Sequence record: ON287370.1
DNA: 64,000 nucleotides
Reading direction: 5' to 3' (one strand)
Every line of letters starts with the position of its first letter. Position 1 is the stretch's first letter. Positions 4,176-60,762 of this stretch are shown here, in pieces. Made by a program: the position numbers and the translations under genes. A model generated the notes under the pieces. That model did no database searches, was not told the DNA's origin, and worked only from the letters and a program-made list of their open reading frames with translations.

Positions 4176-4176
4176 C

Positions 4177-6595: not shown

Positions 6596-6626
6596 GTAAT
6601 TTTCCTTATACTCTTGAGACGGCTAA

Positions 6627-7490
6627 TTAAATAACTTTACGGTTCTTAGGATCCATACCGTCCCAATAGAACTGGTTAATAGCGGAGGCAATATCACCAA
6701 CGGTGTAATAGCCTTTGTTACCGATATCAAACCCTACGTTCTGGGAGTAAGTTAATGAACCACGGGAAGCAACAACTTCATCTGGGCTCTTACCAACTAG
6801 CTTCGGCATGAAGATAGAAAGGTAATAATCTTCCAGAGTTTTGCACTTCTTAATATAACCGTACTTTTCAAAATATTTGAAGACATAATCTTGCTGTTCA
6901 ACAAAAGTCATTTTAGCAAGAGCATCTGCCGTAGTTCCCAGGTCAGGAGCAGTTGTTTTAGGCATGAATTGAATCAGACCAACAGCGCCAGATTTAGGAT
7001 TGCGGGCAGCAGGGTTAAATGTACGACCGGTCTCTAAAGCATTACAGCTTAAGATATAAGAAACGTTATCAGCAGGTTTACCCCAATGCGCTAACCATGC
7101 TTGGTATTTCTCAACACCTGCCGCTGGGACATTTGGATTGCCAGACCACGCAAACCAGTACGATGGGAGACCCTTGGCTTTGCGATAGAATTCCACAAGC
7201 TCATTAAAGCCATCCAGAGTACCTTGACCCCACAGACCATCAATACGCTTGGTATAAAGACCAACAGCAGCCAAACCAGTTTGAACCAAAGTAAACACTT
7301 GACTTGCATCATAGCTACCTTGATATAAAGTTTTGTCGAAGCTCGGTGTATGAGTTTTCAACATCAGAATAAAAGCGTCACGACAGCCTTGCCCAAAAAG
7401 GCCGTCAATGCGGCCTTTGTAGAGGGAAAGCTCACGTAACAATGATTGCAATGTTTTAATTGCGAATACATTAGTGTTACTGTTTGCCAT
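6627..7490 (-). CDS. modular endolysin: two N-terminal PG-binding motifs plus a lytic transglycosylase domain (EL188/KZ144-like)
   Basis: IDGLFGQGC and IDGLWGQGT PG-binding motifs. ALETGRTFNPAARNPKSGAVGLIQFMP carries the catalytic Glu and the GLxQ motif. Confidence 0.85.
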   Translation of the reverse strand: MANSNTNVFAIKTLQSLLRELSLYKGRIDGLFGQGCRDAFILMLKTHTPSFDKTLYQGSYDASQVFTLVQTGLAAVGLYTKRIDGLWGQGTLDGFNELVEFYRKAKGLPSYWFAWSGNPNVPAAGVEKYQAWLAHWGKPADNVSYILSCNALETGRTFNPAARNPKSGAVGLIQFMPKTTAPDLGTTADALAKMTFVEQQDYVFKYFEKYGYIKKCKTLEDYYLSIFMPKLVGKSPDEVVASRGSLTYSQNVGFDIGNKGYYTVGDIASAINQFYWDGMDPKNRKVI

Positions 7491-13479: not shown

Positions 13480-16400
13480 ATGGCAAGCGATAATTTCGAT
13501 ATGGATTGGGGAGATGATCCATTTGCCGGGGATATAGATTTCGATATGGACTTCGATATGGATCCCTTTAAAGGTAAGGGTTTCGTCCGCAGCCTCACCA
13601 CAGGTTTCCTGCAAGGTGCTGTAGATGAGACTTTAGGTTCCGGTGCTGCTCGTATGAGAACACTGAGAACTATCTTACCAAGTTCTTACAGCAATGCCCT
13701 CGATAAACTTTCATTTGTCAGTAGTCGTGTTGACGACTTAGTCAGAGAGTTTAAAGAGGAAAATGCTGAATCCGCCAAATCCTTACAAAGCATTGCTTCC
13801 CACCTCAATCAGAGAATGGGTTCAAAGCTTCCGGGTTTCGCTCAAAATGCATTAGGTAATTTCAGCGATAAAGACTTCTCCATGTGGGAACGTTTAGATC
13901 CTGAAAATCCAAACTTCAAAACCAGAATTGATGGTGTTAATGAAGACGATGTCGACCAAGCTATTGATGCTTCAGTTATGGCTCAGTCTTCGATGTTCGC
14001 CTCTTTGGGTGAATCAATTAACAGCATGGCTGCCACTGTTGGTGGTCAACTATCAGCTACTATTGGTGCTGGTAACCGTCAACTGGTAAATATAGAAGGT
14101 GGTATTAGAGACCTTCTGAGTTATCAAAGAAACGTCCAGGCTAAGTTAGATCAAGCCAAGTTAAACTTGATGGCTCGCTCATATGTACAAGACGCTAAGT
14201 TCTACAAGTTTATGGAAGCAGGTGTTCATGCTGAAGTGGCAGAACTGAAACGCATTGTTCAATATAGTAAACTTTCAGACTTCGAGAAAACTAGTAACCT
14301 CACCGCATCTAAAGCGTACATGCGCAACAGTGTCTTCAATGCTGTTGGTAAACGTGTCGGTGGTGTCACTGGGATGCTCCGTGATCGTTTCAATGCCGAT
14401 TCTCGTAAAGAGAGTTATGGTGTTGTCGGGGACCTCTTAGGGAACCTTGCAGACGGTTTGGAGATGGGTAGTGATGTTGGGTTTAGTCGTGGGTTACTCG
14501 GTAACATCATCGGTAAGATGGTTGCTGGTGTAGCTGTTGATCAACTTCCCTACTTCTTTACTCGTGGTCCAGGTAAACGAGCAGTTGATTCACTGATTAG
14601 AAAGTATCCTGAACAAGGTGCCTTCATCAAAGATCAAATTGCTAAAGTTACCGATATGGGTAATACCGTTTCCCATATTGCAATGTCTGGTGCTGGTATC
14701 GCCAACTACATGGCAGATAACTGGCAGCCTTTAGATGAAATGCGTTTCTACGATTATGAGGAGTATGTTGATTCATTACCTCCTGGTCGTAAGCCACTTC
14801 CTAAAGCTGTATGGGCTACTAAGAACGCTGCAGAGAACAAAGCTAAACAATCTCTTAACCGACTGATGAGTGAGACTACACGTTCACGTGGGACTCAATA
14901 CACCATCAATCGGCGTAATCCTAAAGACTTGGATAAGCCAGGTATTTGGAAAGAGATGAACAACATCACGTTGAATGAAGTCCTTCCAGGATTGATTTCT
15001 CAAACCAACCTTATCTTGGAAAAGATGAGAACTGGTCGAGATGATGTTGAGTCAGTTGGGTATAACTACACTCGTGGTCAATTCCAGAAAGACTCCGATC
15101 GTAGAATCTCTGTTGCATCTGACCTGATGCCTCATTCAGAGTTCCGCAGCTTCACATCTGCTGCTTTGAATATGGTTGACTCTTTAGACCCTGATAAAAT
15201 GTTGTCACCAGGTGCTCGTAAAGCTCTGGCAAAACAGATCGTTGTCGATGTGGATAAAGAGTATGGATTCCAACCACTTTATTACTTAGGTGACATTCCA
15301 GGTGTTTCTCCAGAAAACCTGAAAGAGATCCATGCAGTAATGAAGCGTCACTTTGGAATCACTGATTCTGAAGTTCAACAGTTCCAGTCTGGCGATGGAA
15401 TGACCAGAACCAAGATGCTTGGTCGTTTAGGGACTGCTGAAGGTCGTGAACGTTTAAATGCTGCAAGTTCCCAAGCCCAGGACTTGAAAGCTAACATTCC
15501 TAATATCGCTGAACGTATTAATCTGTTACGTGCTACTGGTAACGAACAGATGCTCCGTGACTTAGGAGTTATCTATACCGATAATGGTATCGATCGAATT
15601 AATATCCAGGCTTTCCATGATCGCATTGGTCAGTACATGGATAACCCAGATAACCCTGTACTGAAAGGCGCGACTCCTAGCGGCAATGGCCCTACTCCAA
15701 CACTGGGTGGGTTGAGAGCTGGTGCAGGTCCGACTGTTAATCCTTACGAAGACCTGAACAATACCTTAGGAACGTTGAATGAAAGACTAAGTAATCTTGA
15801 CCAGCTTAGATCTTCTACAACTGTTAATTGGGACTCTCAGTCTGGTGTCTTTAGTGATATCAAAACAAGTAACCAGGGTATCCTTGATAAGACGACAGAA
15901 ATGTCTATGCTTCTCACTACCTTACTTGATCTAGCTAAAGCAGGCAAACTGTTCTCAGGTGCTCCTGGTCCTCGTGAAGAGAGACAAGAAGAAACTGCTA
16001 AACGTTCTGTTCTAGATAAAGTCAAGAAACTGGTTCCAGAAAACATCCTGGGTAGATCTGCCGAATTCCTCATGAAGAATAACCCACTTATTCTGGGTGG
16101 CTTATTAGGTGGTGTTGCATCATCATTCATGCAGAACCCAATCATGGCTGCTTCTGTAGCTGGATTAGGTTTACTGGGCGGTGCTTATTTACAACACCGT
16201 CAGAAGTCCGGTGCTGCTCCTGATGGAGACATGCCAAGTGATGATGAAGATATCATTGACGAGTCTGGCGAACCTATTCTGAAAGCTTCTAAGCTGAGAA
16301 TGGGCGACTACATGGATATGGCTACCAAGAAGATCATTAAAACTTGGGAAGATATTCGTGGTCCAATTATGGATGTTACAACTAAGACTGTAATTGGGGC

Positions 16401-19400
16401 TAGAGAGCTTGCTGGTAAGATCTTTGGACCAGATGGTAGAGCAGTGGCACTTAAGGGTCTTCGTGCTGTTAGAGACGCTGCTGTGGGTGCATACAACCTC
16501 ATTAATCCGATGGATCGTATTAGATCAACTATCCAACTGGGTAAAGAGTTCATGTACCAACAGGATGTTTATCTCAAATCGGATTTAAAGAATCCTGTTC
16601 TGAGAGCATCTAAGTTTAAAGCCGGTGATTATTTCGTTCGCGATGCCAATGGTAGTTTCAAACCAATCTCTGGCTGGAATGAGATTGATGGAGCTGTTTA
16701 TGATAACCAAGGTAATCAACTGGTTAGTGAAGAGGAATATCAGTCCGGTCTGGTCACTGCCTCAGGTGCTGCTGTACGTAATGTGGGCGGCATGGCTGCT
16801 AATATGGTTGGCAGTGCAGCGGGGTTGGTTAAGTCTGGAATCAATAACCTCCTCGGAAGGTTTGGATATACTCAAGGGCCTAATGCAGGTCCTGGCGCAA
16901 ATGGTCCAAACAAAACTGGTCCAAATGGGGTGGAACGTCGTCTAGACAAAATCTATCGCCTATTGTGTAAGCAGTTTGATATTCCAGGTGAAGTAGATCC
17001 AGATGAACCGTTAGGTGTAACTGGTGAGCCTTCTACAGGTGGAATGCGTTTGAACTCCTTGGCTTGGAAAGAAAAAGAAGCTGAGAAGAAAGAGAAACAT
17101 CGTGTAAATGAAGCCATCATCAATATCTCTGAAACCCTTGGTGGAAGTAAAGATGAAAAAGGACCTAAGAAAGAAGGCAACGGTTTATTTGATAAACTGA
17201 AAGGCTTGATCATGGGTGCTGGCGGCTTCGCTGTCAAACTGTTTAAGAATCCTCTTGGTGCCATTGGGGATGTACTTGGTGGTCTTGGTAAATTTGCAAT
17301 CGGGACTACTGCGGCTTCTATTAAGCGTCTAGGTAAAATCGGCACTGCATTGTTCTCAGGTGTTCTCGGTTTAGCTTCACCTATTTATAAACTTCTGAAG
17401 ACTGGCTTTGTTAAACTTGCTCAAGCATTCATGATGGGCAAAGCAGCAGGTGGTGGTCTGAAAGGTTTACTGGGTAGAGGTTCTCCTGTAGATGATCTTG
17501 ATGTGGAACAACGTGGTCAAGCCGGTAAACGTAAGAAAGGTAAAGCCGGGAAGGCTGGCAAGGTTGCCCGTGGTGGCCGTTTAGCTAGAATGGGAAGAAT
17601 GGCCTTTGGATCTCCTACCGCAGCGGTTGGCAGTTATCTACTTGCTGATATGTTTGGTGATGATACTCAGGATGCTACCCCAACTTCTGGTGCCGATATC
17701 AGTGTCGGTGAACGTGACCCAGTAACCGGCCATTATCGTACAGGTGGGGATGCTATTGTTGATACATTAACTTCTTGGCTTCCTTCTGGTATGTTGGCAA
17801 AAGCTGCTGCTGATTCCCTTCCTATGGATAAAGAAACCAGAGAGAGTGCTAACAACTACGGGATTTTCTGGTCTAGCGATAAGAAGTTCTTCTTTAAACG
17901 TGACGAGATGGAAGCTTGGGAAGATAAGATCAATGGGATTTCTAAAACAGCTGATGGTTACGGTGAACTGAAACCTCAGTATGCTACTCAACCTCGCGCC
18001 GTTCGTTTTGCCATGTATGGTTGTTCTGATCAGCAGTCTTCCTTTGGTAGACGTATTGGTTGGTTGGAACAGGTACTTTATCCTTACGTAACCATTCGTG
18101 ATAATAGGGCTTCATTGAAGAATGATACCCCGGTTGAAAAGATCCTAACTGATTTCTTGAATTCAGATACAGGTTCTAATCGCGATGCAGGTGCAGTACA
18201 AACTTGGTTTATCGCTCGTTTCAAACCAGTCTTCCTTGTTTCTAATGCGGCAGTCTCTGTTGCTAAAATGGGAGACCTGGAGTCGTTTGATAATGCCAAA
18301 GGCTATGAAGTTGTACAGGTACTGGAGCGAGTCCAACAGACTCTAAATACATTCTCCCCTAATCCATTCACTATTGATGTTCGTGTGGATTCGAAGTACG
18401 GGACAATGGGTCCAGAATCTACGAGACACAAAATCGATGCAGTTCTCAAGGATATGGAGAAAACTTATCCTAAGCCACCAATGGCTGTTGAGAAGATTGC
18501 ACCGACTGTTGAAGCACAAGCTAAAGCACAGGCTTCTGGTACACCTAAAGAAACAGGTCCAAGTGCAGATATCACGGCTCAGGATGCGATGTCTAAAATA
18601 GCGGCTAAAGCTTCTATGGATGATATTGCTAAACGCTTTAGTCAACCTGAACAGGTTAAGACTATTGATATTTCTGACTTGATGCCTGGTGGTGATCAAG
18701 AGATGGATCCATTTGTAATGACCCGTCTTGCAGTTTATGGTAACATTGATAACATGCCTTGGCGTGTAGAAGCCGTATTACGTTTAGAACGTTACGTCGA
18801 ATCTTACATCATGGTCATTGGGGATCAAGCCAGATTCACCGGCAAATCTTCCCAACTGTTAGAATTGTTCAAACCTGCATTCCGGATCTCTAACCAGATT
18901 TCAGAAATGAACTGGATGACTTGGTTCCGTGATCGCTTCTTACCTACCTTGATGACTTATACTGTTGAAGTTAAGAAATTAACAGGTGTGGTGCCTTCCC
19001 GTGGTTGGAAGCAACTATCTGCAACTAACCGTGCTAAGATTGCTAGAAAGCTTACTGAACAAATGGTGACAGTTGATCAACAACTTAAAACTGTTTGGGA
19101 AGTTGCTGCTTCTCCATTCCCTAATTCTACTTCTGGTAAATGGTCTGACCGTGCTGACAAGTATCTGAAGATCTTGGATGTTAAAGCGCAGGAAGCAAGA
19201 CTCAAAGATCCAGAGTTGGAAGAAGAGAAATCTCGTGGTACTTCTGGTGATGATCCAGTACAATTGGCTCAAGCAGCAAGGAACAAGCATGTAGCCCAAT
19301 CCGCTATCCAAGAAGTCTTTGGTAGTAGTAAAGGAATTGGGGGATCTTCATTCACTCCATCTATGAGTGGCGTAAGAACCGGTGGACCTACAAGTGTCTA

Positions 19401-20676
19401 CCCTAACCCTACCATGAGTATCGAAGGTGGTGGTGCTGGTTCTGCTGGTCAATTCATGGGTAAACCTGATGCTAACTTTAATCCAGAGTTCTTGAAGAAA
19501 GCAGGTGAAGATAAAGGGATCAAGATGTCTCCTGAACAAGGTGAGAAGCTCATGCTTAATCATCTTCTCAAGGCAGGTATCGCTGATGTCAAAACTATTG
19601 CGCTTGCACTAGCGATGGTTAAGAAAGAAACAGGTAACTACCAGAACACAGTGGAGAACACTAACTGGTCGGCACCTACCCTGTTGAAATACTTCAAGAA
19701 TATACCTGACGCAGCTACAGCTCAGAAGGTCGCAGCAATGTCTCCTCCTGAACGTGCTATGTGGGTTTATGGTCGTGCACCGAAAGGTCCACAGTTAGGT
19801 AATCAGAGTCCTGAAGACGGTTGGAAATATCGTGGTCGTGGTTTCTTCCAATTAACTGGTAAAGCAAACTACGAAAGGTTCAAGAAAGAAACGGGTATTG
19901 ATGTTGTCAATAATCCACAATTGGTTTCTGAGGATCCAAATGTAATGGCTGAATCAGCCGTTAGATTCCTTAAGAACAACAAAGCAATGCTTTCTATTGC
20001 TAAGACTGGAGACTTTGACACAGCGGTTCGTGGAATCAATGGTGGGAACTCAGTCCCTGCCACAGATGAACGTCGTCAATATTACCAGGAATACTTGAAC
20101 AAACTACGTAATGGTGATTTGGCTCTGGATGGTGCCGAAGCAGAACAAGCTGCTAGTACTCCTCCTGCTCCAACTGATCAACCTCCAGCTGCTGCTGATA
20201 AAGGTGCGCCTGCTGGCTCTCCAGCTATCGACACACCAATTGCAACTCCTGTTGGACAGAATACTGTTCCTGACTTATTAAAAGCGGACGCTCAGAAATC
20301 TGCACCATCTAATGCAGGCACTCCACCTCCAATGCAAACAGCATCAACGTTTGATAGTGGTGTGGTTGCAGGTGACGATAATGATGGTCCGGTTAATACA
20401 GTTAACTCCAGTGCTCCATCCAAAGGTCAGCCTTCTGCTCCTACTTCATCTTCTGGTCCTACAGCTCCTAAACCAGCTTCTGTCAAAGAAGCAGCTAAAC
20501 CAGTTGATAAGCAAGCAGAAGTTAAAGCTACACCAGCTCCTGCAATGCCTGATCATATCAATACCACTGATGCTACTGCGGCTAGTCAACTTGCTATTGC
20601 GAACCAAACGCTTAACAAGATTGCTCAGCTGTTGGAAAGAAGTCAGAGTAATCAACCAACGGTAAGAATGAATTAA
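13480..20676 (+). CDS. large tail-associated protein with a C-terminal GH19 (chitinase/lysozyme-like) domain, phiKZ gp181-like
   Basis: 2398 aa. KKETGN...EN and GWKYRGRGFFQLTGKANY are GH19 motifs. It also has Gly/Ala hydrophobic segments, internal repeats and a Pro/Ala-rich C-terminal linker, and is divergent from the beta' gene as in phiKZ. Confidence 0.85.
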   Translation: MASDNFDMDWGDDPFAGDIDFDMDFDMDPFKGKGFVRSLTTGFLQGAVDETLGSGAARMRTLRTILPSSYSNALDKLSFVSSRVDDLVREFKEENAESAKSLQSIASHLNQRMGSKLPGFAQNALGNFSDKDFSMWERLDPENPNFKTRIDGVNEDDVDQAIDASVMAQSSMFASLGESINSMAATVGGQLSATIGAGNRQLVNIEGGIRDLLSYQRNVQAKLDQAKLNLMARSYVQDAKFYKFMEAGVHAEVAELKRIVQYSKLSDFEKTSNLTASKAYMRNSVFNAVGKRVGGVTGMLRDRFNADSRKESYGVVGDLLGNLADGLEMGSDVGFSRGLLGNIIGKMVAGVAVDQLPYFFTRGPGKRAVDSLIRKYPEQGAFIKDQIAKVTDMGNTVSHIAMSGAGIANYMADNWQPLDEMRFYDYEEYVDSLPPGRKPLPKAVWATKNAAENKAKQSLNRLMSETTRSRGTQYTINRRNPKDLDKPGIWKEMNNITLNEVLPGLISQTNLILEKMRTGRDDVESVGYNYTRGQFQKDSDRRISVASDLMPHSEFRSFTSAALNMVDSLDPDKMLSPGARKALAKQIVVDVDKEYGFQPLYYLGDIPGVSPENLKEIHAVMKRHFGITDSEVQQFQSGDGMTRTKMLGRLGTAEGRERLNAASSQAQDLKANIPNIAERINLLRATGNEQMLRDLGVIYTDNGIDRINIQAFHDRIGQYMDNPDNPVLKGATPSGNGPTPTLGGLRAGAGPTVNPYEDLNNTLGTLNERLSNLDQLRSSTTVNWDSQSGVFSDIKTSNQGILDKTTEMSMLLTTLLDLAKAGKLFSGAPGPREERQEETAKRSVLDKVKKLVPENILGRSAEFLMKNNPLILGGLLGGVASSFMQNPIMAASVAGLGLLGGAYLQHRQKSGAAPDGDMPSDDEDIIDESGEPILKASKLRMGDYMDMATKKIIKTWEDIRGPIMDVTTKTVIGARELAGKIFGPDGRAVALKGLRAVRDAAVGAYNLINPMDRIRSTIQLGKEFMYQQDVYLKSDLKNPVLRASKFKAGDYFVRDANGSFKPISGWNEIDGAVYDNQGNQLVSEEEYQSGLVTASGAAVRNVGGMAANMVGSAAGLVKSGINNLLGRFGYTQGPNAGPGANGPNKTGPNGVERRLDKIYRLLCKQFDIPGEVDPDEPLGVTGEPSTGGMRLNSLAWKEKEAEKKEKHRVNEAIINISETLGGSKDEKGPKKEGNGLFDKLKGLIMGAGGFAVKLFKNPLGAIGDVLGGLGKFAIGTTAASIKRLGKIGTALFSGVLGLASPIYKLLKTGFVKLAQAFMMGKAAGGGLKGLLGRGSPVDDLDVEQRGQAGKRKKGKAGKAGKVARGGRLARMGRMAFGSPTAAVGSYLLADMFGDDTQDATPTSGADISVGERDPVTGHYRTGGDAIVDTLTSWLPSGMLAKAAADSLPMDKETRESANNYGIFWSSDKKFFFKRDEMEAWEDKINGISKTADGYGELKPQYATQPRAVRFAMYGCSDQQSSFGRRIGWLEQVLYPYVTIRDNRASLKNDTPVEKILTDFLNSDTGSNRDAGAVQTWFIARFKPVFLVSNAAVSVAKMGDLESFDNAKGYEVVQVLERVQQTLNTFSPNPFTIDVRVDSKYGTMGPESTRHKIDAVLKDMEKTYPKPPMAVEKIAPTVEAQAKAQASGTPKETGPSADITAQDAMSKIAAKASMDDIAKRFSQPEQVKTIDISDLMPGGDQEMDPFVMTRLAVYGNIDNMPWRVEAVLRLERYVESYIMVIGDQARFTGKSSQLLELFKPAFRISNQISEMNWMTWFRDRFLPTLMTYTVEVKKLTGVVPSRGWKQLSATNRAKIARKLTEQMVTVDQQLKTVWEVAASPFPNSTSGKWSDRADKYLKILDVKAQEARLKDPELEEEKSRGTSGDDPVQLAQAARNKHVAQSAIQEVFGSSKGIGGSSFTPSMSGVRTGGPTSVYPNPTMSIEGGGAGSAGQFMGKPDANFNPEFLKKAGEDKGIKMSPEQGEKLMLNHLLKAGIADVKTIALALAMVKKETGNYQNTVENTNWSAPTLLKYFKNIPDAATAQKVAAMSPPERAMWVYGRAPKGPQLGNQSPEDGWKYRGRGFFQLTGKANYERFKKETGIDVVNNPQLVSEDPNVMAESAVRFLKNNKAMLSIAKTGDFDTAVRGINGGNSVPATDERRQYYQEYLNKLRNGDLALDGAEAEQAASTPPAPTDQPPAAADKGAPAGSPAIDTPIATPVGQNTVPDLLKADAQKSAPSNAGTPPPMQTASTFDSGVVAGDDNDGPVNTVNSSAPSKGQPSAPTSSSGPTAPKPASVKEAAKPVDKQAEVKATPAPAMPDHINTTDATAASQLAIANQTLNKIAQLLERSQSNQPTVRMN

Positions 20677-42474: not shown

Positions 42475-42816
42475 TTATTCTTCCAGATTGCCAGGGAAGT
42501 AGCACGCCGCGATACGACCTGCAACCATGCCGGTATAGCAAGTCACGCCACCGATAGCAGCCGCAGTGATGTTAGACTGCGGAGCTGCTTCAGCAATTTT
42601 GCGACCCGCATACAGAGTACCCAAACTAGCTGCTGCTGCAACTGTAGCTGAAACTTTAGAACCAGTTGGACTGATTACTTCCAGCCCAACAGAAACTGCA
42701 GCACCCAGTAAGCCACCCAACATGTTGCGGTTGGTATTCAGGAAGCCTTCTTTTGGCAGCTCTTTAACGTTCAGTTCGTTCAGGCTGTTGATCATTTCTT
42801 GGTTGATAGTAGTCAT
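42475..42816 (-). CDS. Gly/Ala-rich hydrophobic protein in a monocistronic early cassette
   Basis: MLGGLLGAAVSVGL, ATVAAAASLGTLYAG and TAAAIGGVTCYTGMVAG segments; has its own promoter motif and terminator. Confidence 0.75.
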   Translation of the reverse strand: MTTINQEMINSLNELNVKELPKEGFLNTNRNMLGGLLGAAVSVGLEVISPTGSKVSATVAAAASLGTLYAGRKIAEAAPQSNITAAAIGGVTCYTGMVAGRIAACYFPGNLEE

Positions 42817-42873
42817 GATATTTCTCTCTATAGTCAGTTAAGGTTTAAGAACTTTATTGTTCATATTCACTTA

Positions 42874-42891
42874 AATGATATATGTCTGAAA
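42874..42891 (-). promoter_or_regulatory. putative phage early promoter, copy E (TTTCAGAC-ATATATCATT)
   Basis: Consensus match; leader sequence resembles copy G. Confidence 0.6.
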
Positions 42892-47333: not shown

Positions 47334-47957
47334 TTAAGCGAAACGTTTGTTATCTTTACGATTAACGATCAAGCTTGGACGAACATCATAGATCTCAAAC
47401 TTAGGTTGCATGAACCCAGTCGCGTCCATATAGACTTTATCAAAACCTGTGAGATCCATTTCCAATCCAACATCGGTATTGTAGGTATCACCAAAGGTAG
47501 TTAAATACAACCGAGAGATGGAAGGCCAGAATGCTTCATAGATGGTTGCACCACCGATGACCATAACTTCTCCACCTTTATGAAGGGTACCGGCAGTTTG
47601 CTGAATGACTTCTTTAGCTTTATCTGGGGAGTTGACAAACAACAAATACCCAGCATCTTTATTTTCAGCATTAGCAGTATTAATTTCACGAGCCACTGCT
47701 GGATCGAGAGTACGACTAATGACGATATTGATACGACCTGGAAGAGGCTTACCGCCGATCGATTCAAAAGTACTACGACCCATCACGATGATTTTACCCA
47801 GGGTCTGTTTACGGAACCACTGCATGTCTTCCTTACACTTAGGCCAAGGAAGAGTATTGTTAATGCCAATACCACCACTAGCATCTACAGCCACGATCAT
47901 TGCATAAGTAGTGAAGTGAATAAATTCGTTAGTTTTAGCGAAAGTTGTAATGTCCAT
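47334..47957 (-). CDS. folA: dihydrofolate reductase
   Basis: IVAVDASGGIGINNTLPW, EDMQWF, VMGRSTFESIG..PLPGRINIVIS and VIGGATIY. Confidence 0.95.
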   Translation of the reverse strand: MDITTFAKTNEFIHFTTYAMIVAVDASGGIGINNTLPWPKCKEDMQWFRKQTLGKIIVMGRSTFESIGGKPLPGRINIVISRTLDPAVAREINTANAENKDAGYLLFVNSPDKAKEVIQQTAGTLHKGGEVMVIGGATIYEAFWPSISRLYLTTFGDTYNTDVGLEMDLTGFDKVYMDATGFMQPKFEIYDVRPSLIVNRKDNKRFA

Positions 47958-48607
47958 TATTTATCCTTAAGAATTTGATAACACATGTTTAAGAAAGGAA
48001 TGTTCCCGGTCCATTTACGCTGCTTAGAGTAACCAGGTAAAGCAGTGATCTTGTCGTAGATTACCAACTCAGGCATATAAGGGTGAACGGTTTCACCATC
48101 ATGCATTGGGTTATCATCCACTAAACGGATTTCTGAACCAGGGTATTGTTCTTTCAAGAATGCTACTTTATTAGCATGTTCTTTACGATCTAAAGCATGA
48201 ACAGTTTTGAAGATGTGATCAACTTTATTATCTTCTAACCATTCCTCAGTTAAAGGCTTACCGTATTTAGTAAACCCACGGTGAGTACAGATGACAAATT
48301 TGATATCATCCTTGTACTGTTCCATCAGACGTTCACAAAGACTGATGAAGTCACTAGACAACAGCATGGTAGGTTTAGCATCAACCATATAAGTATGCTT
48401 CTTGATGATCTGATAGAATACATCGTCAGATTCATCTTTACGCCAGGACAAACTACTGTGTCCTTTCTTGTGCATTTCCATGATGTAGTTCAATTCAGTT
48501 TCCATGCCACGATCAGTGTAGAACTGTAGCATGAACGCATAGATGAATCCGTATGTATCTACCAACGTATCATCCATATCAAATGCGAGTATAAGTTTGG
48601 GTACCAT
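47957..48607 (-). CDS. HAD-superfamily phosphatase, 5'(3')-deoxyribonucleotidase-like
   Basis: FDMDDTLVD motif I, ICTHRG motif II and LVDDNP motif IV. Confidence 0.75.
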   Translation of the reverse strand: MVPKLILAFDMDDTLVDTYGFIYAFMLQFYTDRGMETELNYIMEMHKKGHSSLSWRKDESDDVFYQIIKKHTYMVDAKPTMLLSSDFISLCERLMEQYKDDIKFVICTHRGFTKYGKPLTEEWLEDNKVDHIFKTVHALDRKEHANKVAFLKEQYPGSEIRLVDDNPMHDGETVHPYMPELVIYDKITALPGYSKQRKWTGNIPFLNMCYQILKDK

Positions 48608-48695
48608 TAGATCTCCGAAACAAAAATAAATAGTTTAACTAAATATAGCATCAACAGTACAAGGATAAATTCCCTGTACTGTCGACGCCAATTCA

Positions 48696-49046
48696 TTATG
48701 CACTGTACTTAGCAACCATCATGTCGAAGGCAGCTTTAGTAGCATCATCCCAAACACCGGTCATGCGCAGACGCTGAGACATGTTGTTGGTTTCAGCGAA
48801 GTCATTGAAGAATGCCTGGAAAGTCATTACGCCATTGTTCTGTGGTTTAGTACGGAACAGTGGGATAGCGCCGAATGCTTTACGACCCAGAGCTTTGATT
48901 GCAGCCATGGAGAAAGAACCGAACTCTTCAGCTTTGTCAGCTTTGGTGTTTGCACCCATAACGTTAGCCAGGGTATCTTTCATGTAAGCCAGACCATCTA
49001 CGTTACGGTCAGCGAAGTGTTCTACGTTTGCGAAGTTGTTAGCCAT
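48696..49046 (-). CDS. small early protein with a C-terminal PG-binding-1-like motif
   Basis: MTFQAFFND...LRMTGVWDDATKAAF fits the Q...L..(D/T)G.WD..T..A pattern; no signal peptide. Confidence 0.7.
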   Translation of the reverse strand: MANNFANVEHFADRNVDGLAYMKDTLANVMGANTKADKAEEFGSFSMAAIKALGRKAFGAIPLFRTKPQNNGVMTFQAFFNDFAETNNMSQRLRMTGVWDDATKAAFDMMVAKYSA

Positions 49047-49111
49047 GATTTATATCTCTCTATAAGTTGATTAAGATTAGTTGTATAAAACTTTATTGTC
49101 TTATACACTTT

Positions 49112-49129
49112 AATTATATATGTCTGAAA
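49112..49129 (-). promoter_or_regulatory. putative phage early promoter, copy G (TTTCAGAC-ATATATAATT)
   Basis: Consensus match; leader sequence shared with copy E. Confidence 0.6.
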
Positions 49130-49150
49130 AAGAATACAAGTGAAACTGAA

Positions 49151-49185
49151 CCCCTCTACTCCCATTAAGGAGTAGAGGGTATATG
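49151..49185 (-). terminator. terminator hairpin related to the CCCT.ACCC family
   Basis: ccctctactcc...ggagtagaggg 11-bp stem. Confidence 0.6.
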
Positions 49186-50079
49186 TTACTCAATAGTTAC
49201 TTTATGGTTAGATAAAAAATGCAGAATATTCGGAGATACTCTTCTTAATGGATTATTGATGAAACTAACTGTTGTCCCGCCGTTATTTGCATAGGTAATA
49301 AGTTTAGTGATCAAATCGGAACCAATATGGTTTCCACGATATTTCTCTAATACATAAATACCGGCAATAGAGAAACTATAGAGTCGAGAACCTCGTTCAG
49401 GTTTACGATATATCAAAACTCCCAACGTTTCTTTAGTCTCGCTATCACGATAGGCTATGGCATCAAAACCACCAACTAATAATTGTGCTGGAGTAATGAC
49501 TGGATTTTGCCAATCCATCGCTTTTGCCAGAATTTCTAAAGTACCTGCATCATTGATGAGGTTTTCAAGATGCACAAGTTCACGGGATGCCGCCTTAATA
49601 ACTTCACGGTCATGAACTTCGTTAGTTTGTTTCCCGCTGATGAAAGGACGACCGGTAGTTGGGCGCCGAGTAAGAGAGTGTTTACCAGAAACCCCAACTT
49701 GTTCATCAATTAATCGGTGACCATAACTATGAAGAAGAGTTTTAAAGGTGTTATAAGTCTCATCACCCCAAACCCCATCACATTCAAGTTGTGGTTGCAA
49801 CATAGCACGACGAGGGACCATGGTGGTACGAACACCTTCATACCACTTCTGAAGTGCCAGGATACCGTCCTCAGGGCGATACATGCCATCTGGAACATAA
49901 GGCTTGGTGCCAAAGATTTCACCAGCAATAAAGTTCAGCGCATTGTAGGTGAACGGTCCAACTAAGCCGTCGATTTTTACATCGCTCAGTTCTTGAATTT
50001 TCTTAATGGTTCCAACACCACGGATCATGGTCTGAATGGAAGCAACACCAGCGATAGCTTTAATTTCATTATGGTTCAT
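49186..50079 (-). CDS. fusion of two PG-binding-1-like motifs and a C-terminal GNAT acetyltransferase domain
   Basis: IKKIQ...IDGLVGPFTYNAL and LALQ...CDGVWGDETYNTF; the GNAT acetyl-CoA motif A reads IYVLEKYRGNHIGSDLI. Confidence 0.7.
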   Translation of the reverse strand: MNHNEIKAIAGVASIQTMIRGVGTIKKIQELSDVKIDGLVGPFTYNALNFIAGEIFGTKPYVPDGMYRPEDGILALQKWYEGVRTTMVPRRAMLQPQLECDGVWGDETYNTFKTLLHSYGHRLIDEQVGVSGKHSLTRRPTTGRPFISGKQTNEVHDREVIKAASRELVHLENLINDAGTLEILAKAMDWQNPVITPAQLLVGGFDAIAYRDSETKETLGVLIYRKPERGSRLYSFSIAGIYVLEKYRGNHIGSDLITKLITYANNGGTTVSFINNPLRRVSPNILHFLSNHKVTIE

Positions 50080-50099: not shown

Positions 50100-50115
50100 G
50101 GGAACCGAAGTTCCC
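50100..50115 (-). terminator. UUCG hairpin after thyA
   Basis: gggaac-cgaa-gttccc. Confidence 0.45.
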
Positions 50116-50127
50116 CAGTTTAGTTAG

Positions 50128-51318
50128 TTAGATTGCGATGGGGAATTTGATACTTGAGAGTGGTTCGTACTTACCGACAACTTTAAAGTCATCGTGATGG
50201 TAACCAAACAACCCTTTAGGTTCAGAGTCCAATATCATTTTGATAGTGGAGTATTTATGCTGACCAGTTGCCCAACGTTCATTCAAAGTTTCAACGCCTT
50301 CCAGATGGTTGCAATAAACATGTGCATCCCAACCGGTATATTTTACAAAGCGCGCTACCATGTTCAGTTCTTTAGCGAACATCATCAGCATAGCTGAATA
50401 CATGTTCATGTTTGCAGGTTGACCCAGAACCCAGTCATTACTACGCATCAGAAACTTCAGATCCAGATAGTATTTAGGAACATTATACTTCTGGATTAAA
50501 CGGTCGATCTTTTCGATAGTCCCACTATTACGATGAACAGGGTATACCGACATCCACTCTTCACGAGAACAAACTTTCTTCAGTTCTTCTACACGTTCAT
50601 GGAAAGGAATCTCCCAAGTGTAGAAACCGAAAGTAAAGTGACATGGGGTCAATGCCATTTTACCACGTGCAGCGTTCTCTGCTGGACTTTTCTTTGGATC
50701 AGGTAGATAGCTTGGGTTCCAGCAATCCACAACGACACGGCGGCTATCAGGATCTTTACGGAGGGTTTCCAACGCATAAGTTAACTGATCGAAGGTAGAA
50801 CCATTTGGGTTCGGCCAGTGACGCCACTGAACACCGTAGACTGGACCCAAGTCACCGTCTTTAGCAACTAAGATATCCTGAGTGTTAGGGATCTGTTGTT
50901 TGTCCAATTCGATATCAATATCTTCAGGACGTTCGGAACCAAAGATCTGGAGAACCTTACCATAAGGAACGCCTTGCTTGATGGCCAGATGTTTCAGACG
51001 CTCCGTACGACTAAGTTCAGTCGGAAGTACTTTATCACCCTGAACTGCAAAGCTATTCCAGAAAGGACAACCATTTTCTTTCAGTTGCTTGATGTTACCT
51101 TCACCGGACATCATCCAGTTGATTTCGATGATAGGGAACTTCAGGTTAAACCAACGAGAGAACAGAACAGGATAAGACTCTCGCAGATCATGACAGTATT
51201 CGAGATCTGGTAATGATAATACACCAGTACCGGTACGGTCACCACGAAGCTGTCCATTACTAACGATGTTGTTCAACTGTTCCATGTACCAAGCTTCGTA
51301 CTTATTCAAAGTCTTCAT
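50128..51318 (-). CDS. thyA: thymidylate synthase (ThyA type) with insertions
   Basis: DRTGTG, DLGPVYGVQWR, MALTPCH (catalytic Cys), RSND..LGQPAN and DAHVYCNH. Confidence 0.95.
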   Translation of the reverse strand: MKTLNKYEAWYMEQLNNIVSNGQLRGDRTGTGVLSLPDLEYCHDLRESYPVLFSRWFNLKFPIIEINWMMSGEGNIKQLKENGCPFWNSFAVQGDKVLPTELSRTERLKHLAIKQGVPYGKVLQIFGSERPEDIDIELDKQQIPNTQDILVAKDGDLGPVYGVQWRHWPNPNGSTFDQLTYALETLRKDPDSRRVVVDCWNPSYLPDPKKSPAENAARGKMALTPCHFTFGFYTWEIPFHERVEELKKVCSREEWMSVYPVHRNSGTIEKIDRLIQKYNVPKYYLDLKFLMRSNDWVLGQPANMNMYSAMLMMFAKELNMVARFVKYTGWDAHVYCNHLEGVETLNERWATGQHKYSTIKMILDSEPKGLFGYHHDDFKVVGKYEPLSSIKFPIAI

Positions 51319-59087: not shown

Positions 59088-59801
59088 ATGTCCGGTTACT
59101 CAACCTTTAACCAAAACAAAAACAACCAACTTCTGGAACACATGTTCCTGGGTCAGAACGTTAACGTTTCTCGTTACGACCAACAGAAGCATGAGATCTT
59201 TGAGAAACTGATCGAGAAACAACTTTCTTTCTTCTGGCGTCCTGAAGAAGTAGACGTTACTCGTGACCGTATTGACTACATGAACCTGCCAGAACATGAA
59301 AAACATATCTTCATCAGTAACCTGAAATATCAGACACTGCTGGACTCTGTACAGGGTCGTGGTCCTAACGTTGCATTCCTGCCGATCATCTCTATTCCTG
59401 AACTGGAAACATGGGCAGAAACCTGGGGCTTCTCAGAAACGATTCACTCTCGTTCTTATACCCACATCATCCGTAACATCGTTAACGACCCATCCATCGT
59501 ATTCGAAGATGTTGTTGATAACGAACACATCACTCGTCGTGCCGGTACCGTATCTAAGTACTATGATGAATTGATCGGTCTGATCAACCAGTATTACTAC
59601 CTGGGTGAAGGTACACACGTCGTGAATGGTAAACGTGTTGTTGTTACCCTGCGTGAAATTAAGAAAGCTTGCTACCTGTGTCTGCAGTCTGTTAACGCAC
59701 TGGAAGCAATTCGTTTCTACGTATCCTTCGCTTGCTCCTTTGCATTCGCAGAACGTAAGCTGATGGAAGGTAACGCTAAGATCATTAAACTCATCGCCCG
59801 T
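59088..59801 (+). CDS. nrdB: ribonucleotide reductase class Ia beta subunit, exon 1
   Basis: GGAG RBS; [24 protein letters not shown] and EAIRFYVSF motifs. Ends at ...KLIAR, immediately before an in-frame TAA. Confidence 0.95.
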
Positions 59802-60762
59802 TAATTCTAGCGGCTTTAGGGAGCGATCCCTATCGAAGAACACTGTTAATTCAGGGGAAGTCTCACTGAGACAATCCTGAGCTATTTAACTTCTACTTCT
59901 CCATGTTATGTATAATACTTTTAACTGGGGATGAAGTGATGCATTATCCTGTATGGATATCTGAGGATTATTTAGTTTACCCTGATGGAAAAGTATGGTC
60001 TGAACTAAACCATAAGTGGCTTAAGTCTGCTTTGAGTAAAGTTTCCGGCTATCTCATCTTTGGAAAGAATGTGACTAAAGTGGTTGGTGGTTCACCTACA
60101 TTACACCGCATACTAGCACATTGCTTCAAGGGTGGTATTCCAGAAGGAATGACTGTGGACCATCTCGATGGGGACAAACTGAATAATGAATTAGACAATC
60201 TCGAAATCGTCACTCATGCTGAGAACACCAAACGTGCTTACGCAGCTGGACTTGCCAAAGGTAAGAAAGGGTCTGCTAACAGTGGTGCTAAACTCACAGA
60301 GGACGATGCCATTAAAGTGTTCCAGTGTTTACAGAAAGGTTGGTCTAACCATGACATAGCCAAGCTAGTAAACCTGCATCCGAATTACATCTCTTTAATG
60401 AGACACGGTAAACGTTGGAAACATCTCTATGATTTCTACGGGCCATTCGGAGAGTCAATTCCATTTGATAAGTTTGGCGAGAAATACGTCATATACTTGA
60501 AGATGAAAGATACACACACAAACAGAGAGATTGCAAAAGCTGCACACGTTGACCCAAGCACAGTTTCACGCTGGCGTTCTGGGCAAACAAGAAGTTAAGT
60601 AGTGCAACGACTATCCCGCAAGGGAGTAGGGTGTAAGCCAATGGCACTCGAAAAGCAGTGGGTCTCAGTAATGAGATCGTGATATAGTCTGTTCTGCATG
60701 GCGACATGCAGCAGTTCATAAGAGAACGGAGTAAACAGTTGCGCGTTTACTCGAACATAAAG
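59802..60762 (+). mobile_element. group I intron (961 nt) in nrdB
   Basis: The 5' exon ends in U and the intron ends in G. P1 is CCGU|UA-auuc-UAGCGG with a U.G pair at the splice site. Q-like AAUCCUGAGC, P7 GACUAU(60609-14)/AUAGUC(60684-89) and P9 UGCAUG-gcga-CAUGCA are present. Removal restores IAR|DEALH. Confidence 0.92.
59939..60598 (+). CDS. intron-encoded HNH homing endonuclease
   Basis: YLVYPDGKVWS N-terminus, LHRILAHCF..TVDHLDGDKLNNELDNLE HNH motif, and two C-terminal HTH-like segments. Lies between the Q and R core elements. Confidence 0.9.
   Translation: MHYPVWISEDYLVYPDGKVWSELNHKWLKSALSKVSGYLIFGKNVTKVVGGSPTLHRILAHCFKGGIPEGMTVDHLDGDKLNNELDNLEIVTHAENTKRAYAAGLAKGKKGSANSGAKLTEDDAIKVFQCLQKGWSNHDIAKLVNLHPNYISLMRHGKRWKHLYDFYGPFGESIPFDKFGEKYVIYLKMKDTHTNREIAKAAHVDPSTVSRWRSGQTRS

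What the first reader, a model, noticed from the sequence alone, without database searches (positions are those of the whole stretch)
48696..50079. Peptidoglycan-binding-domain/GNAT acetyltransferase fusion next to a catalytically orphan PG-binding-like protein
Seen: the 297-aa protein has two PG-binding-1-like motifs (IQ..DGLVGPFT..AL; LQ..DGVWGDET..F) joined to a GNAT domain (YRGNHIG motif A). The next gene (116 aa) ends in a similar motif (FQ..L..TGVWDDAT.AA). Neither has a signal peptide or a hydrolase domain, and the small one has its own early-promoter motif. Known: in phages this domain normally accompanies a muralytic enzyme, as in the endolysin at 6627. Inference: this could be an undescribed system that acylates peptidoglycan, lipid II or a wall-associated protein (superinfection exclusion, lysis timing), or a PG-binding fold repurposed in the cytoplasm with the small protein as partner or regulator.
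Basis: partly seen in the sequence, partly recalled or inferred. Interest (0 to 1): 0.75.

Follow-up and report, generated by a model that had tools for sequence, protein, structure and literature searches.

The report
Wall-binding-domain/acetyltransferase fusion plus abundant early paralog

Summary
The window is Serratia phage vB_SmaM-Sureiya, an OBP-like relative of phiKZ; OBP is described as chimallin-encoding.

- **Gene A** (49189-50079, minus strand, 297 aa) has two peptidoglycan-binding-domain (PGBD) repeats, a disordered basic linker and a complete but divergent GNAT domain.
- **Its N-module** is homologous to the tandem wall-binding domain of the phage's own endolysin (hhalign 95.5%) and to genuine PG_binding_1 repeats (91.5%).
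- **Gene B** (48699-49046, 116 aa) shares more than a C-terminal motif. Its whole length is a diverged paralog of A's N-module (hhalign 96.5%; Foldseek TM 0.77 for the pEt-SU homolog).
- **B is its own transcription unit.** It sits between two hairpins, behind the OBP/N1M2 predicted-early promoter motif. It has the most extreme optimal-codon bias of 69 ORFs in the window and is top in all 13 related loci.
- **The pair always lies between thyA and HAD/DHFR.** I found it only in OBP-like jumbo phages.
- **The GNAT half is fast-evolving.** It is cassette-swapped between Sureiya and Yubaba, degenerate in OBP, and absent in AH04 and Kc263, which carry a separate GNAT.

Neither protein has a signal peptide, membrane segment or hydrolase domain. 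Peptidoglycan acylation is untested. A cytoplasmic binder or sequestering role with an accessory acyltransferase fits best, at low confidence.

The parts
49189..50079 (-). Gene A (SUREIYA_01320), 297 aa: tandem PGBD module, linker and GNAT
   Evidence: ORF; GenBank annotation; Pfam; AF2 model
49906..50079 (-). A, PGBD-like repeat 1 (aa 1-58), motif D37-G-L-V-G-P-F-T44
   Evidence: Helices 3-26, 29-32 and 42-56. It aligns to PBD1 of the endolysin and to a PG_binding_1 repeat. D37 and G38 are invariant or nearly so.
49696..49884 (-). A, PGBD-like repeat 2 (aa 66-128), motif D101-G-V-W-G-D-E-T108
   Evidence: Helices 69-86, 89-92 and 106-128. hhalign. W104 is invariant and G102 nearly so.
49600..49695 (-). 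A, disordered basic linker (aa 129-160, pI about 10.8)
   Evidence: pLDDT below 50 for aa 130-160; pI; length varies across homologs
49189..49599 (-). A, divergent GNAT domain (aa 161-297)
   Evidence: Acetyltransf_1 at 24.3 bits against a 20.7 cut-off. Family profile against PDB GNATs, E 4.5e-5. Foldseek against the PDB, E 2.9e-5, target-normalised TM 0.6-0.69. Strand and helix order.
49321..49338 (-). GNAT motif A, R248-G-N-H-I-G253 (consensus Q/R-x-x-G-x-G/A, with H in place of the first Gly)
   Evidence: Alignment columns. Relatives have RGKGIG, QGMGIG and RGAGVG. N1M2 has RDASIG. The motif is absent in OBP, L007, L017 and L018.
49200..49720 (-). Segment exchanged between Sureiya and Yubaba (linker plus GNAT), approximate limits
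   Evidence: Nucleotide identity is 41-64% here and 96-100% across the rest of a 3.5-kb comparison. megablast splits the match into two pieces.
49152..49179 (-). Hairpin (12-bp stem) directly after gene A, terminator-like
   Evidence: A stable hairpin in the first 70 nt after A is present in all 14 related loci.
49106..49129 (-). OBP/N1M2-type phage promoter motif (predicted early), 59 nt upstream of B
   Evidence: 1 mismatch to the consensus core; 7 matches in the window against 0 in shuffles. Conserved upstream of B in 13 of 14 evaluable relatives. Consensus and 'early' assignment from PMC7058600.
48699..49046 (-). Gene B (SUREIYA_01310), 116 aa: stand-alone diverged paralog of A's tandem PGBD module; extreme optimal-codon bias
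   Evidence: hhalign 96.5%. A's model matches the BFVD model of the pEt-SU B homolog at TM 0.77. Fraction of optimal codons 0.877, top of 69 ORFs. Top in 13 of 13 related loci. Conservation.
48646..48690 (-). Long hairpin (20-bp stem) after gene B, terminator-like
   Evidence: downstream folding energies in relatives
6627..7490 (-). Endolysin (OBPgp279 type): two PGBD repeats plus a lysozyme-like domain. It is the paralogous source, or sister, of the A/B binding module.
   Evidence: Pfam. hhalign to the A family, 95.5%. The OBPgp279 N-terminal domain is described as its cell wall binding domain in PMC3352856.

Best explanation
Shown:
- The locus is a two-gene module specific to OBP-like jumbo phages, built from the tandem cell-wall-binding domain of the phage endolysin.
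- Gene A joins that tandem PGBD module through a flexible basic linker to a small, divergent GNAT acyltransferase.
- Gene B is the same binding module on its own. It is strongly diverged but under tight constraint.
- B is transcribed from its own phage promoter of the type predicted to be early, between two hairpins. Its codon usage points to very high expression.
- Neither protein has an export signal.

Inferred:
- Both proteins act inside the infected cell early in infection. The conserved function is binding, not catalysis.
- B would act as an abundant stoichiometric binder. It would sequester or mask a ligand that is conserved across gamma-proteobacterial hosts.
- A would use the paralogous module to place an acyl-CoA-dependent transferase next to that ligand, or a related one, and N-acylate a free amine on or near it.
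- The most economical candidate ligand is a cytoplasmic peptidoglycan-type molecule: UDP-MurNAc-peptide, the cytoplasmic face of lipid I/II, or recycled anhydromuropeptides. This is the only ligand class documented for the domain family. The free amine would be that of meso-diaminopimelate.

The identity of the ligand is the weakest step.
For: - Homology of A's N-module to the phage's own endolysin domain and to genuine PG_binding_1 repeats. The D-G-(hydrophobic)2-G-x-x-T motif defined for the binding domains of KZ144, EL188 and OBPgp279 (PMC3352856) occurs twice in A.
- B is a paralog of that module.
- GNAT fold and Pfam membership of A's C-terminal half.
- No membrane or signal segment.
- B has a predicted-early promoter and flanking hairpins, conserved in relatives.
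- B's fraction of optimal codons is 0.877 against a window mean of 0.536 (sd 0.093). It is highest in all 13 related loci.
- B is conserved second only to thyA, while A is the fastest-evolving of five neighbouring genes.
- The binding module persists where the GNAT is degenerate or absent.
- The pair sits in the same position in all 16 related loci examined, from phages of Serratia, Klebsiella, Kosakonia, Erwinia, Pantoea, Edwardsiella, Shewanella and Pseudomonas. B itself was not found in L017, and L016 ends before the position where B would lie.
Against: - No binding or activity data exist.
- A's direct Pfam PGBD score is below threshold. The family profile finds no PGBD chain in the PDB by sequence.
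- The PGBD motifs are degenerate in B (first repeat lost; second T-G-V-W-D-D-A-T). They are also degenerate in A of the SXP01/L008 lineage and of L018. The canonical motif is therefore not strictly required.
- B matches genuine PGBDs only through A; direct hhalign is 16-23%. B's own AF2 model is poor (pLDDT 56) and finds nothing in the PDB.
- Motif A of the GNAT is imperfect in Sureiya (H for the first Gly). The aromatic Tyr of the C-terminal motif seen in the neighbouring stand-alone GNATs is replaced (F-L instead of F-Y).
- Fast evolution and cassette exchange of the GNAT fit a variable target at least as well as an invariant wall precursor.
- The 'early' label on the promoter is a published inference, not a measurement.
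Confidence: 0.35

Rival explanations
1. The fold has been repurposed for protein binding. The tandem three-helix module no longer recognises peptidoglycan and instead binds a conserved host or phage protein. B is an abundant early inhibitor or mask of that protein. A brings a protein lysine or N-terminal acetyltransferase to the same or a related target, in the manner of host-takeover GNATs such as Rac of the phiKMV-like phages.
For: - B has lost one PGBD motif and altered the other, yet it carries many invariant polar residues (N3, N4, E9, H10, R14, N15, K51, R55, R65, N71, E85).
- B's N-terminus has low predicted order, which is typical of interaction surfaces.
- The top GNAT matches include RimI-like and N-alpha-acetyltransferases.
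- Rapid evolution and exchange of the GNAT fits an arms race.
- Jumbo-phage GNATs have been proposed to modify host proteins (PMC7824862).
Against: - No partner has been identified.
- A keeps both canonical motifs in most lineages.
- GNAT matches to aminoglycoside, polyamine and sugar N-acetyltransferases are just as good.
- Apart from the matrix-metalloprotease prodomain (Pfam description, from my own knowledge), the PGBD family has no documented protein-binding members.
Confidence: 0.3
2. Binding only; the GNAT is vestigial. The conserved function rests entirely in the two binding modules, and the C-terminal domain of A is catalytically dead or dispensable in Sureiya, as it evidently is in OBP-type homologs. 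Any acetyl transfer in the module is done by the separate GNAT found in relatives.
For: - Motif A is absent in OBP, L007, L017 and L018. The domain is absent in AH04, Kc263 and L015.
- Sureiya and N1M2 have non-canonical motif A.
- A's Pfam score is only just above the cut-off.
Against: - Every lineage that lacks a stand-alone GNAT, except two short distant contigs, keeps an R/Q-x-x-(G/S/H)-x-G motif in A. That makes 6 such lineages against 2. The trend is not significant (Fisher p = 0.13) and is not corrected for phylogeny.
- The full GNAT core is predicted with pLDDT of about 67-89 across its 10-residue blocks.
- G240, V243 and G253 are invariant or nearly so in the motif-bearing clade.
Confidence: 0.15
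3. The proteins act on the wall at the end of infection. A and/or B reach the sacculus only after the holin opens the membrane. There they would serve as extra wall-binding subunits or modulators of the endolysin, as with the free binding-domain subunits of some Gram-positive phage endolysins.
For: - The module is homologous to the endolysin's binding domain.
- Endolysins also lack signal peptides.
- Free binding-domain subunits are known for some endolysins (from my own knowledge).
Against: - B has the predicted-early promoter and lies in an early/middle nucleotide-metabolism block, about 42 kb from the endolysin.
- A GNAT needs acyl-CoA, which is not available outside the cytoplasm.
- B is only weakly similar to the endolysin domain.
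Confidence: 0.07
4. A is a GNAT toxin and B its antitoxin (TacT/AtaT-like), or the pair is an unrelated chance neighbourhood.
For: A GNAT lies next to a small gene.
Against: - B is a PGBD paralog, not a ribbon-helix-helix DNA binder.
- B lies downstream of A with its own promoter and terminator.
- There are no PADLOC or NCBIfam hits.
- Adjacency holds in 14 of the 15 related loci that cover the position, and the two proteins share a homologous module.
Confidence: 0.03

Closest known systems
N-terminal peptidoglycan-binding domains of modular Gram-negative phage endolysins (OBPgp279, KZ144, EL188; Pfam PG_binding_1 / PG_binding_3)
   Same: Tandem three-helix repeats carrying D-G-(hydrophobic)2-G-x-x-T. 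Profile homology to the copy in the same phage is 95.5%. No signal peptide.
   Different: There is no muralytic domain. The gene lies in an early/middle nucleotide-metabolism block. The module is fused to a GNAT (A) or stands alone (B). B has lost most of the motif.
Stand-alone GNAT of the same gene block in relatives (OBP_240, AH04_225, Kc263 'AAC(3)')
   Same: GNAT fold and the same neighbourhood between HAD and DHFR. It is present in all five loci where A lacks an intact GNAT and a stand-alone copy could be looked for.
   Different: Similarity to A's GNAT is only generic: hhalign 93%, 15% identity. It has canonical motifs A and B and much stronger Pfam scores. Sureiya has no such gene.
Phage host-takeover or anti-defence GNATs (Rac of phiKMV-like phages; AcrVA5, from my own knowledge)
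   Same: Small phage-encoded GNATs thought to act on host or defence proteins; fast-evolving.
   Different: None has a PGBD targeting module or a paralogous binding-only partner. No sequence relationship beyond the superfamily was tested.
Free cell-wall-binding-domain subunits made alongside some Gram-positive phage endolysins (from my own knowledge)
   Same: A binding module is produced separately from the enzyme that carries the same module.
   Different: Those arise from an internal start within the endolysin gene, are identical in sequence to the enzyme's domain, and are late. B is a separate gene with 19% identity to A, predicted to be early, and is not next to the endolysin.
Abundant early phage 'sponge' proteins (Tad1, named; Tad2 and Acb2 from my own knowledge)
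   Same: Small early proteins with no catalytic domain. The working idea for B is the same: stoichiometric sequestration.
   Different: No sequence or fold relationship. B's ligand is unknown. This is an analogy only.

Membership tests
PGBD-like superfamily (Pfam PG_binding_1 PF01471 / PG_binding_3 PF09374) | Score above the Pfam gathering threshold | tested here: not met
   A scores 16.4 bits on PG_binding_3 against a 24.6 cut-off; B has no hit. Of 16 family members, 9 give sub-threshold PG_binding_3 hits and 3 give PG_binding_1 hits at E <= 0.05; of those shown individually, only P0033 (23.3 bits, cut-off 23) exceeds it.
PGBD-like superfamily (Pfam PG_binding_1 PF01471 / PG_binding_3 PF09374) | Significant profile-level homology to genuine members | tested here: met
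   For A: the family profile retrieves proteins that Pfam scores at 40-426 bits as PG_binding_1 or 3. hhalign gives 95.5% to the endolysin domain and 91.5% to a triple PG_binding_1 protein. For B the link runs only through A; direct comparison gives 16-23%.
PGBD-like superfamily (Pfam PG_binding_1 PF01471 / PG_binding_3 PF09374) | Three-helix repeat with the D-G-(hydrophobic)2-G-x-x-T loop | tested here: met
   For A: two repeats with this helix pattern at pLDDT of about 69-92, with DGLVGPFT and DGVWGDET. B is partial: four matching helices in a low-confidence model, with only TGVWDDAT. A structural match of the excised N-module to solved PGBD structures could not be obtained, because GNAT hits filled the Foldseek list.
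PGBD-like superfamily (Pfam PG_binding_1 PF01471 / PG_binding_3 PF09374) | Binds peptidoglycan | not testable with these tools
   Needs a pull-down on sacculi or EGFP-fusion binding, as done for the endolysin domains in PMC3352856.
GNAT acyl-CoA N-acyltransferases (Pfam Acetyltransf_1 PF00583) | Score above the Pfam gathering threshold | tested here: met
   24.3 bits against 20.7. 7 of 12 long-form homologs match, best E 6e-11.
GNAT acyl-CoA N-acyltransferases (Pfam Acetyltransf_1 PF00583) | Core fold b1-a1-a2-b2-b3-b4-a3-b5-a4-b6 | tested here: met
   The DSSP elements run in this order over aa 166-296. Foldseek against the PDB gives E 2.9e-5 and target-normalised TM up to 0.69 against solved GNATs.
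GNAT acyl-CoA N-acyltransferases (Pfam Acetyltransf_1 PF00583) | Pyrophosphate-binding motif A, Q/R-x-x-G-x-G/A | tested here: inconclusive
   Sureiya has R-G-N-H-I-G, with His at the first Gly position, and N1M2 has R-D-A-S-I-G. Yubaba, L009, Survivor, pEt-SU and SXP01 are canonical. The motif is absent in OBP, L007, L017 and L018.
GNAT acyl-CoA N-acyltransferases (Pfam Acetyltransf_1 PF00583) | Acyl-CoA binding and transfer to an amine | not testable with these tools
   Needs a thermal-shift or DTNB assay.
Modular phage endolysin (OBPgp279 type) | Muralytic catalytic domain (lysozyme-like, GH19, SLT or amidase) | tested here: not met
   No such hit for A or B in Pfam, PHROGs or NCBIfam, apart from one 15.5-bit PHROG endolysin hit that covers the PGBD repeat. 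The labels 'lytic transglycolylase' (Survivor) and 'muramidase' (Kc263) on homologs rest on the binding domain alone.
GNAT toxin / RHH antitoxin pairs (TacT, AtaT, KacT) | Small DNA-binding antitoxin co-transcribed with the GNAT toxin | tested here: not met
   B is a PGBD paralog with its own promoter and terminators. PADLOC gives no hit.
Fem-type peptidoglycan-precursor aminoacyl transferases (double GNAT fold) | Two GNAT-like domains; FemAB family signature | tested here: not met
   A has a single 137-aa GNAT and no FemAB hit at E <= 1.

The most novel reading that the evidence does not exclude
B is an abundant early cytoplasmic 'sponge' for peptidoglycan precursors or recycled muropeptides, and A N-acylates the diaminopimelate amine of the same molecules. 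This would be a previously unknown way for a nucleus-forming jumbo phage to shut down host wall synthesis, or to blind muropeptide-based signalling, from inside the cell, using a domain recruited from its own endolysin.
Probability: 0.15. Interest if true: 0.85.

Novelty: new variant of a known kind. Interest (0 to 1): 0.5.

Why it matters
Peptidoglycan-binding domains in phages are known as targeting modules of lytic enzymes that act at the end of infection. Here the same module has been duplicated twice into a block of predicted early or middle genes, with no lytic domain and no export signal.

One copy carries the strongest codon-usage signature of high expression in the region, in every related phage examined. 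That points to an abundant early function in OBP-like chimalliviruses that nobody has described.

- If the ligand is a wall precursor or muropeptide, this would be a new host-takeover or signal-masking mechanism, and a new natural binder for such molecules.
- If the ligand is a protein, it would show an endolysin domain being re-used for a different job.

Either way the pair is small, soluble by prediction, and easy to test. The analysis also corrects misleading database labels ('muramidase', 'lytic transglycolylase') on homologs that lack a catalytic domain.

Tried and rejected
- **Single-sequence PDB search of A.** Only a marginal GNAT hit.
- **Family-profile PDB search of A.** GNATs only, with no PGBD chain. 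The PGBD link therefore rests on the large-library search and on hhalign.
- **Foldseek of the whole A model against the PDB.** The 50 hits shown are all GNATs, so the N-module was never compared with solved PGBD structures.
- **B's own AF2 model.** pLDDT 56, and no PDB match below E = 2.4. It was not used as evidence. Support came instead from A's model matching the BFVD model of the pEt-SU B homolog.
- **B profile against the PDB.** Nothing significant.
- **IMG/VR scan for A.** No relatives. The scan for B found only pEt-SU.
- **Scan of one genome for each of 185,579 bacterial and archaeal species for A.** No relatives. The family therefore looks confined to lytic jumbo phages, within the limits of a pattern-seeded search.
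- **Fusion of the neighbouring stand-alone GNAT as the origin of A's GNAT.** Not supported. The similarity is only generic, 15% identity.
- **Complementarity between an intact GNAT in A and a stand-alone GNAT.** A suggestive trend only: 6/2 against 2/5, Fisher p = 0.13, lineages not independent.
- **Toxin-antitoxin, Fem-type and endolysin readings.** Rejected on the membership tests.
- **PADLOC and NCBIfam.** Nothing.
- **OBP genome and proteome paper, PMC3264338.** Not held, so I could not check whether gp236 or gp237 are virion proteins.
- **Literature searches for a PGBD-GNAT fusion in phages.** No description found.
Full report
**Identity of the window**

The region is 100% identical to Serratia phage vB_SmaM-Sureiya (ON287370.1, 256 kb, genus Petsuvirus). 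Window coordinate equals record coordinate minus 62000. [quoted passage not shown] OBP is listed among chimallin-encoding phiKZ relatives in PMC10299810.

Both genes of the finding lie on the minus strand.
- Gene A is 49189-50079 (297 aa). GenBank calls it 'peptidoglycan binding-like protein'.
- Gene B is 48699-49046 (116 aa), annotated hypothetical.
- Upstream lies thyA (50128-51318). Downstream lie a HAD phosphatase (47957-48607), DHFR (47334-47957), a ClpP-like protease and a 519-aa ORF at the position where relatives carry a GroEL-like chaperonin.

**Checking the observation**

The GNAT assignment is sound.
- Acetyltransf_1 scores 24.3 bits against a 20.7 cut-off.
- The family profile finds solved GNATs at E 4.5e-5 and below.
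- The AF2 model has mean pLDDT 76.5. It places a complete b1-a1-a2-b2-b3-b4-a3-b5-a4-b6 core at aa 166-296.
- Foldseek matches that core to RimI-like, AAC(3)-Ia, SSAT and GNA1 structures at E of about 1e-5 to 1e-4, with target-normalised TM 0.55-0.69.
- No acceptor class can be read from these equally good hits.

The PGBD assignment is weak by Pfam alone: PG_binding_3 scores 16.4 bits, below its cut-off. Three independent lines make it firm.
1. A profile of ten family members was searched against 1.84 billion representative proteins. It retrieved multi-repeat proteins at E 1e-12 to 1e-4, with several hits per protein on profile positions 10-60. Pfam scores these proteins as PG_binding_1 or PG_binding_3 far above threshold.
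2. hhalign of the family against the N-terminus of the phage's own endolysin (6627-7490) gives 95.5%, E 1.4e-8, across both repeats. That endolysin is an OBPgp279-type enzyme with two binding sub-domains.
3. hhalign against a genuine triple PG_binding_1 protein gives 91.5%.

The model shows two helix / short helix / loop / helix repeats. Both loops carry the D-G-(hydrophobic)2-G-x-x-T motif defined for the binding domains of KZ144, EL188 and OBPgp279.

One gap remains. The family profile found no solved PGBD by sequence, and GNAT hits crowded the Foldseek list, so a direct structural match of the N-module to a solved PGBD was not obtained.

**Gene B is more than a motif**

The B family aligns to the A family over its whole length: B 7-116 on A 4-125, 96.5%, E 8.4e-10. 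In BFVD, the predicted structure of the pEt-SU B homolog (108 aa) matches the N-module of my A model at TM 0.77 and rmsd 2.9 Å. B is therefore a stand-alone paralog of the tandem module.

It has diverged substantially.
- The first repeat has lost the D-G..G..T loop.
- The second reads T-G-V-W-D-D-A-T.
- Direct comparison with genuine PGBDs is not significant.

My own B model was poor (pLDDT 56) and matched nothing, so I do not rely on it.

**Expression signals**

- A 12-bp-stem hairpin follows A at 49152-49179.
- The N1M2/OBP promoter consensus published in PMC7058600 matches 49106-49129 with one mismatch, 59 nt before B's ATG. That paper considers the motif phage-specific and early. The window has 7 matches and shuffles have none.
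- A 20-bp-stem hairpin follows B at 48646-48690.
- The layout of hairpin, promoter and B is conserved. The promoter motif is present in 13 of 14 evaluable relatives, and the hairpin after A in all of them.
- B's fraction of enterobacterial optimal codons is 0.877. That is the highest of 69 window ORFs (mean 0.536, sd 0.093). B is also the top gene in all 13 related loci, at 0.69-0.95 against about 0.5 for its neighbours.

I read this as strong translational selection, meaning a very abundant protein. That reading is an inference from codon usage, not a measurement.

**Distribution and evolution**

The family is small.
- Word-seeded search found 6 clusters for A and 7 for B.
- The exhaustive profile search found 12 representative clusters of A at E below 1e-30.
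- tblastn finds B in eight isolated phages: Sureiya, Yubaba, N1M2, SXP01, Kc263, AH04, OBP, Survivor and pEt-SU, counting Sureiya and Yubaba together.
- None of the hits lies in EL or phiKZ. A pattern-seeded scan of 185,579 bacterial and archaeal genomes found no relative.

In all 16 related loci examined, the A family member sits directly after thyA, or one or two small ORFs later. B follows it, then HAD and DHFR. L017 has a non-homologous 177-aa gene where B would be. L016 ends before that position.

Rates of change differ sharply between neighbours. The table gives amino-acid identity to Sureiya.

| Gene | N1M2 | SXP01 | Survivor | OBP |
|---|---|---|---|---|
| thyA | 85 | 75 | 59 | 60 |
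| A | 48 | 26 | 25 | 23 |
| B | 84 | 64 | 44 | 44 |
| HAD | 88 | 44 | 30 | 36 |
| DHFR | 68 | 47 | 35 | 39 |

Across the three more distant phages B is conserved second only to thyA; against N1M2 the HAD gene is slightly more conserved. A is the fastest-evolving of the five genes.

The GNAT half is the unstable part.
- Sureiya and Yubaba are 96-100% identical in DNA over 3.5 kb. The exception is roughly 49200-49720 (aa 125-297 of A), where identity falls to 41-64%.
- That is a clean exchange of linker plus GNAT. The break points sit at the domain boundary and at the stop codon.
- Yubaba's allele reappears joined to a different N-module in a metagenomic homolog, P0005.

Motif A (Q/R-x-x-G-x-G/A) varies by lineage.

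| State of A | Stand-alone GNAT next to DHFR | Lineages |
|---|---|---|
| Motif A canonical | absent | Yubaba, L009, Survivor, pEt-SU |
| Motif A canonical | present | SXP01, L008 |
| Motif A imperfect (R-G-N-H-I-G; R-D-A-S-I-G) | absent | Sureiya, N1M2 |
| Motif A absent | present | OBP, L007 |
| Motif A absent | absent | L017, L018 |
| No C-terminal domain | present | AH04, Kc263, L015 |
| No C-terminal domain | not evaluable (contig ends) | L016 |

Lineages whose A lacks an intact GNAT usually carry a separate 160-177-aa GNAT beside DHFR. The association is only a trend: 6/2 against 2/5, Fisher p = 0.13, and the lineages are not independent. The separate GNAT is no closer to A's GNAT than any other GNAT would be.

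The conserved core of the module is therefore the two binding proteins, and the acyltransferase is accessory.

**Location**

Neither protein has a hydrophobic segment; the maximum 19-residue Kyte-Doolittle mean is below 1.0. Without a signal peptide, and with a predicted-early promoter on B, both should act in the cytoplasm or the phage nucleus. A GNAT also needs acyl-CoA, which is found only inside the cell.

**Mechanism**

What is shown is the anatomy, the homologies, the transcription-unit structure, the codon bias and the evolutionary pattern. What follows is inferred.

The most economical model has three parts.
1. The duplicated endolysin module still recognises a peptidoglycan-type ligand, now in its cytoplasmic forms: UDP-MurNAc-peptides, lipid I/II, or recycled anhydromuropeptides.
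2. B is made early and in excess, and sequesters or masks that ligand.
3. A tethers an N-acyltransferase to it through a flexible basic linker (pI about 10.8). The diaminopimelate amine is the obvious acceptor.

I put this at about 0.35. The main rival, at about 0.30, is that the fold has been re-used for protein binding, with A acting as a targeted protein acetyltransferase. B's lost motifs, its many invariant polar residues and the fast-evolving GNAT all favour that rival. A binding-only reading with a vestigial GNAT gets 0.15, a late role at the wall 0.07, and a toxin-antitoxin reading 0.03.

**Comparison with known systems and novelty**

Each domain belongs to a well-known superfamily, and database annotators had noticed parts of the proteins. 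Four things are not described in the literature I could search:
- the PGBD-GNAT fusion;
- its binding-only paralog;
- the independent, predicted-early and apparently massive expression of that paralog;
- the cassette-like turnover of the GNAT.

The exhaustive profile search found no other protein that combines this module with a GNAT; the two-stretch hits were tandem GNATs. I classify the finding as a new variant of a known kind. It is of moderate interest: a clear and cheap experimental lead, not a demonstrated new mechanism.

Noticed in passing
window 42475-42816 (-), promoter motif at 42868-42891 (-): A second small gene (113 aa, rich in Gly and Ala, hypothetical) carries the same predicted-early promoter motif with 1 mismatch. 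It has the third-highest optimal-codon fraction in the window (0.76). It may be another abundant early protein.
   Followed up: no
window 50128-51318 (-): The thymidylate synthase is 396 aa, and its residues 11-395 align to 263 positions of the 266-position Pfam model. It therefore carries about 120 extra residues as insertions. The length (393-408 aa) is conserved in all relatives.
   Followed up: no
L005 (Shewanella phage SXP01, PV593634.1) 4001-4825 and 6580-7065: The A homolog (274 aa) and a stand-alone GNAT (161 aa) are intact ORFs but are not annotated in the GenBank record.
   Followed up: partly
L004 3983-4972 (Pantoea phage Survivor); L013 2633-3085 (Kosakonia phage Kc263): Homologs of A are annotated 'lytic transglycolylase' and 'muramidase', although they contain only the binding module (with or without a GNAT) and no catalytic lytic domain.
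   Followed up: yes
window 59088-59804 (+): A 238-aa ORF has the second-highest optimal-codon fraction in the window (0.77). Its function was not examined.
   Followed up: no
window 13480-20676 (+): A 2398-aa gene is annotated 'putative peptidoglycan hydrolase'. It gives the window a third protein related to peptidoglycan, besides the endolysin and gene A.
   Followed up: no
window 50100-50115, between thyA and gene A: A short GC-rich hairpin (GGGAAC..GTTCCC) lies in the 48-nt gap, and no phage promoter motif lies before A. A is therefore probably read through from thyA.
   Followed up: no
L006 (Edwardsiella phage pEt-SU) 4682-4954: An extra 90-aa ORF sits between A and B. It is the only evaluable relative in which the promoter motif is not found within 200 nt upstream of B.
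   Followed up: no
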